35,899 nucleotides of DNA from Octopus bimaculoides (Eukaryota), in NCBI RefSeq assembly GCF_001194135.2, contig NC_069005.1:33315756-33351654 (forward strand). Reading direction: 5' to 3'. The first letter of the stretch is position 1. The number at the start of each line of letters is the position of its first letter. Below are positions 30,201 through 34,671 of the stretch, one piece after another. The position numbers and the translations under genes are program-made. Under the pieces are notes generated by a model. That model searched no databases. It worked only from the letters and a program-made list of their open reading frames with translations, and was not told the DNA's origin.

Positions 30201-30334
30201 ATGTCTCACGTAGAGAATGGATGGTTCCATGAAATTCACAACTACATGGACCTGGGAATCAGTTTGGCAGTTGAAATTGAAGAAGTTCTCTTCCAGGGCA
30301 AGTCTGATTATCAAGACATCCAGGTATTTCGAAG
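30201..30334 (+). CDS. SRM: Spermidine-synthase-family aminopropyltransferase, coding exon 1 (MSHVENGWFHEIHNYMDLGISLAVEIEEVLFQGKSDYQDIQVFR)
   Basis: gccATG context; GWF.E and S.YQDI.VF motifs; AG|GTGAGT donor, phase 2. Confidence 0.9.
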
Positions 30335-30449
30335 GTGAGTCACTTCCTCTTTCTGCTCTCTCTCTCCCCACTTAATATATATATATACATATATATATAT
30401 ATATATATACATATATATATATATATATATATATATATATATATATATA

Positions 30450-31278
30450 NNNNNNNNNNNNNNNNNNNNNNNNNNNNNNNNNNNNNNNNNNNNNNNNNNN
30501 NNNNNNNNNNNNNNNNNNNNNNNNNNNNNNNNNNNNNNNNNNNNNNNNNNNNNNNNNNNNNNNNNNNNNNNNNNNNNNNNNNNNNNNNNNNNNNNNNNNN
30601 NNNNNNNNNNNNNNNNNNNNNNNNNNNNNNNNNNNNNNNNNNNNNNNNNNNNNNNNNNNNNNNNNNNNNNNNNNNNNNNNNNNNNNNNNNNNNNNNNNNN
30701 NNNNNNNNNNNNNNNNNNNNNNNNNNNNNNNNNNNNNNNNNNNNNNNNNNNNNNNNNNNNNNNNNNNNNNNNNNNNNNNNNNNNNNNNNNNNNNNNNNNN
30801 NNNNNNNNNNNNNNNNNNNNNNNNNNNNNNNNNNNNNNNNNNNNNNNNNNNNNNNNNNNNNNNNNNNNNNNNNNNNNNNNNNNNNNNNNNNNNNNNNNNN
30901 NNNNNNNNNNNNNNNNNNNNNNNNNNNNNNNNNNNNNNNNNNNNNNNNNNNNNNNNNNNNNNNNNNNNNNNNNNNNNNNNNNNNNNNNNNNNNNNNNNNN
31001 NNNNNNNNNNNNNNNNNNNNNNNNNNNNNNNNNNNNNNNNNNNNNNNNNNNNNNNNNNNNNNNNNNNNNNNNNNNNNNNNNNNNNNNNNNNNNNNNNNNN
31101 NNNNNNNNNNNNNNNNNNNNNNNNNNNNNNNNNNNNNNNNNNNNNNNNNNNNNNNNNNNNNNNNNNNNNNNNNNNNNNNNNNNNNNNNNNNNNNNNNNNN
31201 NNNNNNNNNNNNNNNNNNNNNNNNNNNNNNNNNNNNNNNNNNNNNNNNNNNNNNNNNNNNNNNNNNNNNNNNNNNNNN
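30450..31278. other. Assembly gap in SRM-like intron 1 (other gaps: 1865-2338, 5855-6432, 7685-8250, 9050-9316, 13735-13788, 15134-15175, 21767-22135)
   Basis: Runs of N, most bordered by microsatellites. Confidence 1.
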
Positions 31279-31592
31279 CTTCCCATTCAGGGTCATTTGC
31301 ATCTTTGCAGGGTTCATAAAAACTGGTTTTAATGTCATGTTTAGTGGTGAAACATTAAGCAATTTTTTTTATCTAATGCTCCTTTTATTTGTGGTCCATC
31401 AAACTCAGGGTACAGTCCTAGGTATACACTAGCAAGTGCCCAGCAATGCCCATCCCTTATGAAGGGGGAATTTCTGCAAACAGAAAAGTTGATATTTGTG
31501 TAATGGCTTCAAAGCATGATGGCCACACTTCTGTCCCATCTTCTCTTTCTTGAATCAGCCTCCATTCTTGTCTCCTTTCTGTTTTCTTCCAG

Positions 31593-31713
31593 CAAGAAAT
31601 TTGGCAACATGTTAGTGTTGGATGGCCTCATCCAATGTACCGAGTGGGATGAATTTGCCTATCAAGAGATGATTGCTAATCTCCCTCTTTACAGCCACCC
31701 TAATCCAAAAAAG
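31593..31713 (+). CDS. SRM: SRM-like exon 2 ([40 protein letters not shown])
   Basis: ttccag / GTAATC splice sites, 121 nt, LDG.IQCTE.DEF.YQEM motif. Confidence 0.95.
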
Positions 31714-31900
31714 GTAATCTCTATTTCTAATTCGTACACATGGAACACTGTCACCTCACTTCCTACAAAACTATGATGTTACTATTATTATTATTATTAT
31801 TATTAGTGGTGGTGTTACTTTAATTTTATTTCTATCACTTTACTCGTCTCCCTCCCCCCATACACATGCATCCTTATCGTTATTGCTGTCTCATGACCAG

Positions 31901-31993
31901 GTCCTTGTTATCGGTGGTGGTGATGGTGGAGTCCTCCGTGAAGTGGCCAAACACCCAATGGTCAAGCAGATTGTCTTGTGTGAGCTGGATGAA
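31901..31993 (+). CDS. SRM: SRM-like exon 3 ([31 protein letters not shown])
   Basis: accag / GTAAGT splice sites, 93 nt; GGGDGG dcSAM-binding motif. Confidence 0.97.
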
Positions 31994-32515
31994 GTAAGTA
32001 TATATTTTATCTACTTATCTATCTGTCAGTGTCCCCCTTCCCCTTCTCTCTCTCTATATATAAGTTTATCATGCCAAGGACCTATATTCCATTAAGGGAT
32101 GTTTGCATCCTAGTTCTCTGGTTTTTACCAGTGTTCAGAGTAAAACTAAATGCGTTAGTTTTGCATTGATGGAAATGGCTGTTTAAGATATTCATAAACG
32201 AGAAAAAGAAGAAAATGGAGAAATTGACATGCAGATATCAGTTTATTCAAAGATATTCCAAACAATATAATATGATTATTTTGAATATCTTTGAACAATC
32301 TGATGTCTATATGTCAATTTCTCCATTTTCTTCTTTTCCTCATTCATATATATGTATATATATATATATATATATATATATATATATATATATATATAAA
32401 GGAAATTATAATAAACACAAGTTTATATCCATATCATTTGTTCCTACATACGTTTCATTGTTGTGGTTGTTTGGTAGAATTCTGCTGTATACTCTTCACT
32501 TGGAATGTTTTACAG

Positions 32516-32669
32516 AAAGTTATCGAAGTGTCCAAACAGTTCCTACCAAAAATGGCTCTTGGTTTTAGCCATCCAAAGGTGACTGTGTGTATCGAAGAGG
32601 GCACCAAATACATGCAGCAGACTGAAGATCGTTTTGATATCATTATTAACGATTGTACAGATCCTGTGG
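32516..32669 (+). CDS. SRM: SRM-like exon 4 (KVIEVSKQFLPKMALGFSHPKVTVCIEEGTKYMQQTEDRFDIIINDCTDPV)
   Basis: tacag / GTAAGT splice sites, 154 nt; FD.II.D..DP catalytic motif. Confidence 0.95.
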
Positions 32670-32904
32670 GTAAGTAAAGCCTGTTTATTTTGTTTGTAGA
32701 CTCCCCACACACATGTGCATGTGTGTGTGTGTATATATATTTCAAAAAGTGTCTCCCTTTCACTTGTCAATTCAATTTTATCCAGTAAGATACATCAGTT
32801 CCAATTGTTGGGTTTCTCTTCATATTTTAATAAATCTATTGAGTTCTTTGCTAAACCCTTAAACTAACAGAGAGCCATCTATCCATATGTTTATATATAT
32901 ATAT

Positions 32905-33307
32905 ATTAATTTGAAAGAGACAAGTTCCAAAGTCAATAATACTCCCCCTCATCAAAGCTGACACATCTCTAAACACAGAGGACATATATAAGCCATCATA
33001 AGCATGTGAACACATTATATATATACATATAGTAGTATATAATTCTGTGCCCAAATCAAAGTCAGATAAGTAATTGCATCAATACATACAGATAAATACA
33101 AGCTGATGAGATAACAGTTCACATTTATGAAATTCTTCATCCGACTTTGATTTAAGCATGGAATTACGCTATTATATGTATATATATGTTTTTTATATGT
33201 TATGTGTTTGCATGTTTATAATGGCTTATATGTGCCCTCTGTGTTTAGAGATGTCGGCTTTGATGAGGAGTATTATTGACCTTGGAACTTGTCTCTTTCA
33301 AATTAAT
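32905..33307. repeat. Long inverted repeat (fold-back element): arms 32905-33067 and 33139-33307, ~70-nt spacer, in SRM-like intron 4
   Basis: Outer 41 nt are complementary with a single mismatch; the arms remain alignable throughout. Confidence 0.9.
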
Positions 33308-34209
33308 ACTTTAATCTAAACACTCAATAAAATGAGTCCTACACTGTCATTTCTTGAAAAGAGTTCACCTCTATAAATTTTCATTACTTTTATATATATA
33401 TATATATATATATATATATATATAAGCTGTCTAAGACTCCATAAGTGAGGAAAGTATATCCATTACAGCTGATCTTACCAATCAGTTTCACACAAGCGGT
33501 TCAAAAGAGTATTAGGTAACAGTCTGATTATGTAACCCTGCACTCGTCAGAGGTAGCTGCAATGGAATGAAATATGGCGACTGTTCTCTATTATTTGAAG
33601 TGAATAGACACATCTGGTTTGTGGTTACTGTGAAAAAGTTGATGAAACATTGAGTACGCGATTAAGTTAAGAGTTATGTCCCTTGGTATGTGTGTAAAAA
33701 AAATATTAAAATATACTATTTAAAAGATTTATTCAAATAACCATTGAGTACTTAATGCACTAATTATAAATATCCATTTCTTTGACAATTTGAAATTCAC
33801 TTGTTAAGGATGATGGAAAATACTGTGTTTGATGTTATATGTGTGTGTGTGTGTGTGTATGTGTCTGTTGTGTGCGTATTGAAAACCTGCCATTTATATG
33901 AGCTTAAATGAGTGGATCTCAACCTTTTTAATATCAAAGCTAGATCCAAAGCCTAGATTTTTTTTAGGGTTCTGCACCTAAAAAAAGTAAAACAAAGTAA
34001 AAAAATATCATATTCATAGAAGAAAGGCTGTTGTGGGCCAGTGAAAGGATACTCGAGAGCCACAGTCAAGAACTACTGGCCCACACATAGAGTTCTTGTA
34101 TTCTTTAGTGAGTGCCAGTCTAAAAAGATAGGGGTTTACATGGCAAATACCTCCCACATAGGGTCTGTCCTACAATACTGTGTACTGACCACCATTTCCA
34201 TTATTTCAG

Positions 34210-34293
34210 GTCCAGGCCTTGGTCTTTATTCCAGAGAATTCTATGAAAACATTCACAAAGTCTTGAATCCAGGAGGAATTCTGTGTTCTCAAG
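34210..34293 (+). CDS. SRM: SRM-like exon 5 (GPGLGLYSREFYENIHKVLNPGGILCSQ)
   Basis: ttcag / GTAAGA splice sites, 84 nt, phase 1/1. Confidence 0.93.
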
Positions 34294-34525
34294 GTAAGAA
34301 GTGATGCTGGGATGGCATGGTGGGAAGGGCTAGTGTAGTGTGACAGAGGTGGTGGGGTTGTGTTGATTCATCCTAATTGTGTGTTAATTGATGTTTCCCA
34401 AATTCCCAGTCAAAGCAATGGGGGTGATGATGATGATGATTGTGTGAGTGAATATGTGACTTCTAACTTCAGGTACGTTATCTGTTCTGTGACACACCTG
34501 TAATCACTTCTTATCTCTATTACAG

Positions 34526-34671
34526 GTGAAAGTCAGTGGTTTGATCATCTTCTACTGAAAGACATCATAACATTTGCCAAGGAACTCTTCCCAAGGGTTG
34601 CCTATGCTTATGCACCAATGCCAACCTATTTAGGGGGACAAATTGGTTTCATTCTCTGCAGCAAGAACCAG
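34526..34671 (+). CDS. SRM: SRM-like exon 6 (GESQWFDHLLLKDIITFAKELFPRVAYAYAPMPTYLGGQIGFILCSKNQ)
   Basis: tacag / GTACGT splice sites, 146 nt; PTY..GQIGF.LCSKN motif. Confidence 0.95.

What the first reader, a model, noticed from the sequence alone, without database searches (positions are those of the whole stretch)
30201..34671. Spermidine-synthase paralog with a remodelled amine-acceptor pocket: a possible independently evolved spermine or long-polyamine synthase
Seen in sequence: the catalytic and cofactor residues are intact (human-equivalent Q49, Y79/Q80, D104 in GGGDGG, E124, D173/D176, Y241). Three normally conserved positions are changed. WPG becomes (M)DLG with a 1-residue insertion (W28 equivalent, codon 30249). 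TERDEF becomes TEWDEF (R74, codon 31645). PTYPSG becomes PTYLGG (P242, codon 34630). From memory of human SRM/SMS structures, W28 and P242 cap the putrescine pocket and exclude longer acceptors. From memory, yeast spermine synthase Spe4, itself derived from spermidine synthase, changed the same three sites (FPG, TEFDEF, PTYTSG). Inference: this enzyme may take spermidine, norspermidine, agmatine or another amine, giving cephalopods an undescribed polyamine route alongside a canonical SRM.
Basis: partly seen in the sequence, partly recalled or inferred. Interest (0 to 1): 0.75.

Follow-up and report, generated by a model that had tools for sequence, protein, structure and literature searches.

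The report
Divergent cephalopod spermidine-synthase paralog
Octopuses and cuttlefish keep a second, well-conserved copy of the spermidine-synthase gene that has lost the tryptophan said to restrict the enzyme to putrescine, so it may make a different polyamine, but no enzyme assay exists yet.

Summary
Window 30201-35773 holds seven clean GT-AG exons of Octopus bimaculoides XP_014770081.1, annotated "spermidine synthase". An eighth 15-nt exon lies about 7.3 kb past the window end. The assembly gap sits inside intron 1 and hides no coding sequence.

MDLG, TEWDEF and PTYLGG are at the stated codons, and the cofactor and catalytic residues are intact.

New here:
- The octopus has a second SRM-family gene (XP_052829729) that keeps Trp28.
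- The window-type copy also occurs in Argonauta and in the cuttlefish Sepia esculenta, as mRNA, so it predates the octopus/cuttlefish split.
- It is under strong purifying selection: 1 non-synonymous against 23 synonymous differences between two Octopus species.
- Trp28 is invariant in all 164 other eukaryote-type SRMs that have a residue there.
- The clade also changed T172N, S174C, A181G, E182L, F185Y and I125L, around the catalytic Asp and the gatekeeping loop.

- P242 changes are general traits of a molluscan "type B" SRM lineage.
- R74 is variable.
- The partner gene is not canonical, and no canonical SRM was seen in cephalopods.
- Loss of Trp28 is neither necessary nor sufficient for spermine synthesis elsewhere.

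Verdict: a functional aminopropyltransferase paralog with a remodelled acceptor site. Its substrate is unknown. Whether octopus has a canonical spermine synthase was not tested.

The parts
30201..30334 (+). Exon 1 (ATG at 30201). Encodes the N-terminal beta-hairpin, including Y15-M16-D17-L18-G19 in place of L-W-P-G.
   Evidence: There is an in-frame stop 30 codons upstream.
30246..30257 (+). Codons M16 D17 L18 G19. They replace Trp28-Pro29-Gly30 of canonical SRM and add one extra residue.
   Evidence: Trp is present in 164 of 164 other SRMs. Which of M, D or L takes the Trp position is ambiguous between alignments.
30335..31592 (+). Intron 1. It contains the assembly gap 30450-31278, which follows a (TA)n microsatellite.
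31593..31713 (+). Exon 2. TEWDEF (W63 at 31645-31647 = human R74); Y68 and Q69 = Y79 and Q80.
31901..31993 (+). Exon 3. GGGDGG (D93 = D104 at 31922-31924); E113 = E124; L114 = I125L.
32516..32669 (+). Exon 4. IEEG (E144 = D155E at 32597-32599). N161-D162-C163-T164-D165 = T172N, D173, S174C, S175T, D176 (32648-32662).
34210..34293 (+). Exon 5. The rest of the gatekeeping loop, G-P-G-L-G-L-Y (A181G at 34215, E182L at 34218, F185Y at 34227), and Q195 = Q206.
34526..34671 (+). Exon 6. E197 = E208; Y230 = Y241 (34627); L231 = P242L (34630); PTYLGGQIGF.
35651..35773 (+). Exon 7 (C-terminal domain). It lies outside the finding's stated end. Exon 8 (15 nt) is about 7.3 kb past the window end.

Best explanation
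The locus encodes an intact, expressed and selectively constrained aminopropyltransferase of the spermidine-synthase (SRM/PABS) family.

ORIGIN. It arose by duplication of the molluscan 'type B' SRM gene before octopuses and cuttlefish diverged.

WHAT IS SHOWN. It keeps every residue that binds decarboxylated SAM and that deprotonates and positions the attacking amine. It has replaced the floor of the amine-acceptor tunnel: Trp28-Pro29 became Met-Asp-Leu. It has also rebuilt the segment around the catalytic Asp and the gatekeeping loop (T172N, S174C, A181G, E182L, F185Y).

WHAT IS INFERRED. It still transfers an aminopropyl group from dcSAM. Its acceptor preference is changed or broadened away from strict putrescine use, towards a longer or otherwise different amine. 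The new acidic residue at the tunnel floor is a candidate anchor for an extra positive charge. The sister copy, which keeps Trp28, would then supply spermidine. The product is not known.
For: REAL, INTACT GENE.
- Clean 8-exon model identical to XP_014770081.1.
- E = 7e-104 to human SRM.
- AlphaFold2 pLDDT 92.5, pTM 0.92.
- TM 0.96-0.97 and RMSD 0.9 A to human SRM with MTA and putrescine, 2o06.

INTACT CHEMISTRY.
- Q49, Q70, Y79, Q80, D104, E124, D173, D176, Q206, E208 and Y241 are conserved.
- D104, Q80 and V107 rule out a PMT-like switch to SAM.

CONSTRAINT.
- O. bimaculoides vs O. vulgaris: 1 non-synonymous and 23 synonymous differences, omega about 0.01.
- Octopus vs Sepia: 80% amino-acid identity and dN 0.133. 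The Trp-keeping copy shows 75% and 0.164.

AGE AND EXPRESSION.
- Orthologs with MDLG, NDCTDP, GPGL and YLGG occur in Argonauta and in Sepia esculenta mRNA contigs.
- The sequencing runs are identified as S. esculenta.
- Both paralogs occur in one run.
- The cuttlefish forms were seen on 94 + 30 + 5 transcript contigs.

REMODELLED SITE.
- Of 89 columns that are at least 95% conserved in 179 reference SRMs, all window-type proteins differ at 10. The sister copy differs at 3.
- 6 of 27 inferred stem changes fall in residues 172-186, against 0 of 24 for the sister copy (post hoc).
- Role of Trp28: PMC12812037 and PMC6514230.

PRECEDENT. SpdSyn duplicates became spermine synthases in budding yeasts and in plants (PMC12803844).
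Against: - There are no biochemical data.
- The residues that hold putrescine's distal amine (D176, Q206, E208) are all kept, so putrescine may still be a good substrate.
- Trp28 is not conserved across the wider, mostly bacterial-like family. It is W in only 53 of 150 representatives, in a gappy alignment.
- A ctenophore SpdSyn with Tyr at this site makes spermidine with only traces of tetraamines.
- Plant spermine synthases keep the Trp.
- The AlphaFold model is least confident exactly at the two remodelled loops: pLDDT 70 for residues 11-20 and 74 for residues 161-170. No coordinates were available to measure the cavity.
- The Argonauta ortholog has Y241F, higher dN and a GC3 shift. This hints at looser constraint in that lineage.
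- The phylogenetic placement has weak bootstrap support, 47-59%.
Confidence: 0.55

Rival explanations
1. It is still an ordinary spermidine synthase. It would be a subfunctionalised duplicate (different tissue, stage or kinetics) whose pocket changes are tolerated drift.
For: - All catalytic, dcSAM-binding and putrescine distal-amine residues are kept.
- The fold is superimposable on human SRM.
- A ctenophore SpdSyn lacking Trp at this site is still a SpdSyn.
- Many bacterial-type family members lack this Trp.
- The canonical type A SRM was not seen in cephalopods, so both copies might share spermidine synthesis.
Against: - Trp28 is invariant in 164 of 164 other eukaryote-type SRMs, including the sister copy.
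- Ten changes at near-invariant positions are fixed across octopus and cuttlefish, against three in the sister copy.
- The changes cluster at the catalytic Asp and gatekeeping loop.
- Drift does not predict 80% identity, with these changes retained, across the octopus/cuttlefish split.
Confidence: 0.3
2. It is specifically a spermine or thermospermine synthase that arose independently in cephalopods.
For: - Loss of the Trp that blocks longer amines.
- Precedent of SpdSyn-derived SpmSyn in yeasts and plants.
- A yeast Spe4-like protein also changed W28, P242 and the gatekeeping loop.
Against: - Animals normally make spermine with the AdoMetDC-fusion SMS, which is widespread in animals. Its presence in octopus was not tested.
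- The yeast and plant solutions differ in detail: Phe instead of Trp in yeast, a roughly 20-residue hairpin insert with Trp kept in plants.
- No polyamine profile of cephalopods was found in the searched literature.
Confidence: 0.15
3. It is a catalytically dead or decaying copy (pseudoenzyme or pseudogene).
For: - Argonauta has Y241F and faster protein evolution.
- D155E in octopods.
Against: - Intact ORF and splice sites in four genomes.
- mRNA in cuttlefish.
- Omega about 0.01 within Octopus.
- All catalytic residues are kept in Octopus and Sepia.
Confidence: 0.04
4. It is an artefact. The gene model would be mis-joined across the assembly gap, or the odd residues would be sequencing errors.
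For: An 829-N gap lies between exons 1 and 2 and is unresolved in the current assembly.
Against: - The same exon structure and the same residues occur in three other gap-free genomes and in cuttlefish mRNA.
- The gap flanks are colinear with the orthologous intron.
Confidence: 0.01

Closest known systems
Human/eukaryotic spermidine synthase (SRM, EC 2.5.1.16; PDB 2o06)
   Same: - 53-54% identity, E = 7e-104.
- Same two Pfam domains.
- Predicted fold TM 0.96-0.97.
- Same dcSAM-binding and catalytic residues.
- Eight coding exons. Six of the eight exon lengths match the sister copy.
   Different: - Trp28-Pro29 is replaced by Met-Asp-Leu.
- T172N, S174C, S175T, A181G, E182L, F185Y, I125L, I217L and P242L. 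D155E in octopods.
Cephalopod sister copy (O. bimaculoides XP_052829729, Argonauta P0049, Sepia pharaonis speE P0127) and molluscan 'type B' SRMs
   Same: - Nearest relatives by NJ tree and by signature residues.
- Shared non-Pro at positions 29 and 242, LCE motif and C-terminal ...GL.
- Same intron positions.
   Different: - The sister copy and all type B proteins keep Trp28, T172, A181 and E182.
- Only 50-58% identity between the two paralogs within a species.
SpdSyn-derived spermine synthases (budding-yeast Spe4 type; plant SPMS)
   Same: - Origin by duplication of a SpdSyn gene followed by change at the acceptor site (PMC12803844).
- A Millerozyma 314-aa Spe4-like protein also changed W28, P29, P242 and the gatekeeping loop.
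   Different: - Independent event in a different kingdom.
- Yeast uses Phe, not Met-Asp-Leu, and keeps R74 and T172-D-S-S-D.
- Plants keep W-P-G and add a roughly 20-residue hairpin insert.
- Activity is shown for the yeast and plant enzymes, not for this one. That the Millerozyma protein is a SpmSyn is my inference, from its length and its relatedness to the assayed D. hansenii enzyme.
Animal spermine synthase (SMS; PDB 3c6k)
   Same: Same aminopropyltransferase superfamily.
   Different: - SMS has an N-terminal AdoMetDC-like domain and a bacterial-type APT domain.
- Here the protein is 289 aa with the SRM-type N-terminal domain.
- Only E = 1e-15 to 3c6k over 142 residues.
Putrescine N-methyltransferase (plant PMT, SPDS-derived)
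   Same: Another neofunctionalised SpdSyn duplicate.
   Different: PMT activity needs D103I, Q79T and V106T in the cofactor site (PMC3725402). The octopus protein keeps D, Q and V.

Membership tests
Spermidine synthase / PABS family (PF01564 + PF17284) | PABS catalytic domain plus the SRM-type N-terminal beta-hairpin (tetramerisation) domain | tested here: met
   PF01564 E = 2.8e-71 and PF17284 E = 2.1e-21. TM 0.96-0.97 to 2o06.
Spermidine synthase / PABS family (PF01564 + PF17284) | dcSAM-binding residues: GGGDGG with D104, Q80, E124, Q49, D155 | tested here: met
   All are present. D155 is Glu in Octopus and Argonauta and Asp in Sepia. The role assigned to D155 is from memory.
Spermidine synthase / PABS family (PF01564 + PF17284) | Catalytic and positioning residues D173, Y79, Y241 (S174 acts through its backbone) | tested here: met
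   D162, Y68 and Y230 are present in Octopus and Sepia. S174 is Cys, but its role is through the backbone. Argonauta has Y241F. Roles from PMC12812037.
Strictly putrescine-specific eukaryotic SpdSyn (EC 2.5.1.16) | Trp28 closing the acceptor tunnel | tested here: not met
   Met-Asp-Leu replaces Trp-Pro. Trp is present in 164 of 164 other SRMs. Role.
Strictly putrescine-specific eukaryotic SpdSyn (EC 2.5.1.16) | Distal-amine binding residues D176, Q206, E208 | tested here: met
Strictly putrescine-specific eukaryotic SpdSyn (EC 2.5.1.16) | Makes spermidine from putrescine and nothing longer | not testable with these tools
   Needs an enzyme assay.
SpdSyn-derived spermine synthase (yeast Spe4 / plant SPMS type) | Descent from a SpdSyn duplicate, with a separate SpdSyn retained in the genome | tested here: met
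   There are two SRM-family genes on different chromosomes in O. bimaculoides. Both paralogs also occur in Argonauta and in Sepia esculenta transcripts. Whether the sister copy is the SpdSyn is inferred.
SpdSyn-derived spermine synthase (yeast Spe4 / plant SPMS type) | Aminopropylation of spermidine to spermine | not testable with these tools
   Needs an assay. The sequence parallels are partial.
Animal spermine synthase (SMS) | N-terminal AdoMetDC-like domain fused to a bacterial-type APT domain, about 360-430 aa | tested here: not met
   289 aa, SRM-type N-domain, weak partial match to 3c6k. Definition.
Putrescine N-methyltransferase | Ile and Thr at the positions of D104 and Q80 (use of SAM instead of dcSAM) | tested here: not met
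   D93 and Q69 are kept. Criterion.
Thermospermine synthase (ACL5 / Chloroflexota type) | Closer sequence relationship to ACL5-type enzymes than to SRM | tested here: not met
   E = 2.2e-38 to 6bq2, against 7e-104 to SRM.

The most novel reading that the evidence does not exclude
Coleoid cephalopods evolved a dedicated synthase for a polyamine other than spermidine (spermine, thermospermine, a nor- or homo-polyamine, or an aminopropylated cadaverine or agmatine). It would have arisen by duplicating and re-tooling a spermidine synthase, independently of fungi and plants. This would be the first such case in animals, which otherwise rely on the bacterial-derived AdoMetDC-fusion spermine synthase.
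Probability: 0.3. Interest if true: 0.75.

Novelty: new variant of a known kind. Interest (0 to 1): 0.55.

Why it matters
Spermine and thermospermine synthases are known to have arisen repeatedly from spermidine synthase duplicates in fungi and plants. In animals, the only route described in the most recent survey (PMC12803844) is the horizontally acquired AdoMetDC-fusion enzyme and its coral thermospermine-synthase offshoot. That survey does not mention molluscs.

An old, tightly conserved cephalopod duplicate that has lost the substrate-limiting Trp would be a natural experiment in aminopropyltransferase specificity. It is a candidate source of an undescribed cephalopod polyamine.

It also exposes a wider pattern. 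Molluscs carry two or more SRM lineages. Cephalopods seem to have kept only descendants of the non-canonical lineage. This raises the question of which gene supplies the spermidine needed for hypusination.

The claim can be tested directly with a published E. coli expression and LC-MS assay.

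Tried and rejected
- CANONICAL SMS IN OCTOPUS. This could not be tested. Two literature searches found nothing useful.
- PRIMARY STRUCTURE PAPERS. Wu 2008 and Sekula & Dauter 2018 were not held, and Wu 2007 had no PMC id. 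The roles of R74 and P242 therefore remain unverified. Only Trp28 is supported, by secondary sources.
- POCKET MODELLING. The structure tool returns confidence and secondary structure but no coordinates. Both remodelled loops have lower pLDDT.
- dN/dS ON DEEP BRANCHES. Synonymous sites are saturated (pS 0.81-0.85), so only dN and the within-Octopus omega are usable.
- ACTIVE-SITE ENRICHMENT. A broad, pre-defined set of 'active-site segments' showed no significant enrichment of stem changes (11 of 27, p = 0.12). Only the post-hoc 172-186 window is enriched.
- TREE. Biopython bootstrapping timed out. A faster NJ run gave weak support for the key nodes. No ML tree program was available.
- tRNA AND Rfam SCANS of the window found nothing.
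- TANDEM COPY. None was seen. The upstream 30 kb holds only repeats and a transposon-like ORF. The downstream neighbour is NAA25/MDM20.
- PMT-LIKE METHYLTRANSFERASE reading rejected.

Full report
**What is there.**
The window is Octopus bimaculoides chromosome CM046625.1. Window position equals L001 position plus 20200.

From 30201 a gene runs on the + strand. It has seven exons inside the window: 30201-30334, 31593-31713, 31901-31993, 32516-32669, 34210-34293, 34526-34671 and 35651-35773. All have GT-AG borders. An eighth 15-nt exon lies about 7.3 kb past the window end.

The 285 residues encoded in the window are identical to XP_014770081.1, annotated 'spermidine synthase', 289 aa. The protein matches human SRM at E = 7e-104 and carries PF17284 plus PF01564.

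**The gap.**
The N-run 30450-31278 lies inside intron 1 (30335-31592), after a (TA)n microsatellite.
- Exon 1 and exon 2 join in frame through a split Ser codon. The junction VFRS|KKFGN aligns without a gap to human VFRSKTYGN.
- O. vulgaris, O. sinensis and Argonauta hians have the same eight exon lengths (134, 121, 93, 154, 84, 146, 123, 15). Their intron 1 is free of Ns.
- The two gap flanks align colinearly to the O. vulgaris and O. sinensis intron 1.
- Cuttlefish mRNA contigs are colinear.

The gap is still unfilled in the current assembly, but it hides no coding sequence.

**The observation.**
The equivalents of Q49, Q70, Y79, Q80, D104, E124, D173, D176, Q206, E208 and Y241 are intact.

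Among the other SRMs aligned (animals, fungi, amoebozoans):
- Trp28 is invariant (164 of 164).
- Pro29 is P in 148.
- Arg74 is R 144, S 13, K 9, F 1.
- Pro242 is P 150, A 11, T 3, others 3.

**A second gene, and where this one comes from.**
O. bimaculoides has a second SRM-family gene on chromosome CM046616.1 (XP_052829729, P0121). It has the same intron positions. It is 87% identical to its Argonauta ortholog and 75% identical to the Sepia form.

Mollusc SRMs fall into two groups.
- Type A is slow-evolving and canonical. It has WPGQ, TERDEFS and PTYPSG, and is 69-75% identical to vertebrate SRM.
- Type B has W[ADSN]GY and PTYxGG.
- Solemya, Haliotis, Gigantopelta and Liolophura have both types.

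An NJ tree puts the window-type clade (100% bootstrap) next to the cephalopod second copy (47%), inside type B (59%). Signature columns agree:
- 4 of 7 A/B-discriminating columns are B-like and none is A-like.
- Five residues are shared only with the second cephalopod copy, including the C-terminal ...GL.

No cephalopod type A protein appeared among the best 120 hits of three searches. This suggests loss. A diverged copy below the list cut-offs, or one that was never annotated, cannot be excluded.

**Age, expression and constraint.**
Window-type orthologs exist in O. vulgaris and O. sinensis (≥90% identity), in Argonauta hians (75%) and in Logan transcript assemblies (78-80%).

Two of the runs carrying those transcripts (SRR19578107, SRR25097171) are Sepia esculenta larval RNA-seq. 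One run (SRR29271471) carries both paralogs. The duplication therefore predates the split of Octopodiformes and Decapodiformes. From memory, that split is on the order of 250-300 million years old.

The gene is transcribed in cuttlefish. Its forms were seen on 94 + 30 + 5 contigs, against 112 + 20 and more for the other copy.

Selection:
- O. bimaculoides and O. vulgaris differ by 1 non-synonymous and 23 synonymous changes, omega about 0.01.
- Octopus vs Sepia, the window-type protein is more conserved than the Trp-keeping copy: 80% vs 75% identity, dN 0.133 vs 0.164.
- Deeper dS is saturated.
- The Argonauta ortholog is the outlier: dN 0.149 to Octopus against 0.078 for the other copy, GC3 0.66, and Y241F.

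**What changed.**
Against 179 reference SRMs, 89 columns are at least 95% conserved.
- All window-type proteins differ at ten of them: W28, P29, I125L, T172N, S174C, S175T, A181G, F185Y, I217L and P242L.
- The sister copy differs at three (P29, S175, P242). P242 is also changed in all five, and P29 in four of the five, non-cephalopod type B proteins.
- E182L is also fixed, and D155E occurs in octopods.

A crude parsimony count gives similar totals on the two post-duplication stems, 27 vs 24. However, six of the 27 fall in residues 172-186, the catalytic Asp and gatekeeping loop, against none of 24. This window was chosen post hoc. A broader pre-defined active-site set was not significantly enriched (p = 0.12).

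The pattern is therefore not faster evolution overall. It is a one-off remodelling of the acceptor side of the active site, followed by long conservation.

**Structure.**
AlphaFold2 gives pLDDT 92.5 and pTM 0.92. Confidence dips at residues 11-20 (the MDLG loop) and 161-170 (the gatekeeping loop). The model superimposes on human SRM-MTA-putrescine at TM 0.96-0.97 and 0.9 A. No coordinates were available, so the cavity could not be measured.

**What the literature says.**
[quoted passage not shown] - Spermine synthases arose from SpdSyn duplicates in budding yeasts and in plants. Animals use an AdoMetDC-fusion SMS. Molluscs are not mentioned (PMC12803844).
- PMT evolution needs D103I and Q79T (PMC3725402). 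The octopus protein keeps both residues, so it should still use dcSAM.

**Cautions.**
- Plant SpmSyns keep W-P-G and instead carry a roughly 20-residue hairpin insert.
- A ctenophore SpdSyn with Tyr at this site makes spermidine and only traces of tetraamines.
- In the wider, largely bacterial-type family the aligned position is W in only 53 of 150 representatives.
- A Millerozyma 314-aa protein has W28F, P29A, P242T and a changed gatekeeping loop, but keeps R74. It has the same length and yeast family as the assayed D. hansenii SpmSyn, and I infer it is a SpmSyn from that.

**Most likely mechanism.**
- Shown: the gene is intact, old, expressed and constrained. The cofactor and catalytic residues are kept. 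The tunnel floor and gatekeeping loop are rebuilt.
- Inferred: the protein still transfers an aminopropyl group from dcSAM. Removing the Trp plug and introducing an acidic residue at the tunnel floor shifts or widens acceptor preference towards a longer or different amine. The Trp-keeping sister copy makes spermidine.

I put about 0.55 on a changed or broadened acceptor specificity, about 0.3 on an ordinary (subfunctionalised) SpdSyn, and little on a dead copy or an artefact.

**Comparison and novelty.**
By fold, domains and catalytic residues it belongs to the SRM/PABS family. It fails one defining feature of strictly putrescine-specific eukaryotic SpdSyn, the Trp28 plug. It is not an animal-type SMS, a PMT or an ACL5-type enzyme.

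It resembles the yeast and plant SpdSyn-to-SpmSyn neofunctionalisations in origin, but it is independent and uses different substitutions. The gene is already annotated, as plain 'spermidine synthase'. My literature searches found no description of its paralogy, its age or its remodelled site. I rate it a new variant of a known kind, with moderate interest until an assay is done.

**Not done.**
I did not test whether canonical SMS is present in octopus. I did not examine squid or Nautilus orthologs, build an ML phylogeny, measure pocket geometry, or look at tissue expression in octopus.

Noticed in passing
P0047/P0180/P0184 vs P0012/P0091/P0107/P0059 (proteins); no window coordinates: Mollusc SRM genes form two lineages. 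Type A is canonical and 69-75% identical to vertebrate SRM. Type B is divergent (WxGY, PTYxGG). Solemya, Haliotis, Gigantopelta and Liolophura carry both. Both cephalopod genes look like type B descendants, and no cephalopod type A was seen in three top-120 lists.
   Followed up: partly
L012 10001-37013 (O. bimaculoides second SRM gene, XP_052829729): The Trp-keeping octopod copy has its own changes at near-invariant sites (T72S, P239A, F248L; ATYACG). The Sepia ortholog lacks them. So the presumed housekeeping SpdSyn of octopods is itself unusual.
   Followed up: partly
L002 10001-28750 (Argonauta hians ortholog, P0002): The Argonauta window-type gene has Y241F, Q245E and I246C. Its dN is twice that of the other paralog over the same species pair, and GC3 is 0.66 against 0.45-0.48 elsewhere. 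This could reflect relaxed constraint or GC-biased conversion.
   Followed up: partly
P0214 (Mytilus californianus XP_052076490): This is a third, very divergent SRM-like protein in a mussel. It has no Trp28, reads QVAEFDEF, and has DPHDNTGAAKGL in place of the DSSDPxGPA gatekeeping loop. It is still a strong PF01564 hit.
   Followed up: no
P0245 (Thelohanellus kitauei 'spermidine synthase'): A myxozoan SRM also reads TEWDEF and lacks Trp28. So the R74W change recurs independently.
   Followed up: no
window 34941-35075 (intron 6): After a (GT)n run lies a tRNA-like, SINE-looking element. It is present at the orthologous place in O. sinensis and O. vulgaris, and as a 70%-identical copy in an intron of the other SRM gene. 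ARAGORN and Rfam report nothing.
   Followed up: partly
window 18549-18917 (+): A 122-aa ORF resembles the C-terminal tail of a LINE/RTE reverse transcriptase (judged by eye). It has no Pfam hit.
   Followed up: partly
window 1865-2338, 5855-6432, 7685-8250, 9050-9316, 13735-13788, 15134-15175, 21767-22135, 30450-31278: There are eight assembly gaps in 36 kb. Most are flanked by (TA)n, (GA)n or similar microsatellites. The upstream 30 kb is AT-rich and repeat-rich, with no convincing coding ORF.
   Followed up: no
L001 25463-32931, L003 32290-39541, L004 30374-37675 (downstream of the window): The downstream neighbour on the minus strand is a NatB auxiliary subunit (MDM20/NAA25-like) gene. It is conserved in O. 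bimaculoides, O. vulgaris and O. sinensis. There is no tandem SRM copy.
   Followed up: partly
CDS comparisons: Proportions of synonymous differences for the window-type gene (0.81-0.85) exceed the random expectation of 0.75. They are higher than for the other paralog over the same species pairs (0.58-0.72). This points to a composition shift or a higher local mutation rate at this locus.
   Followed up: no
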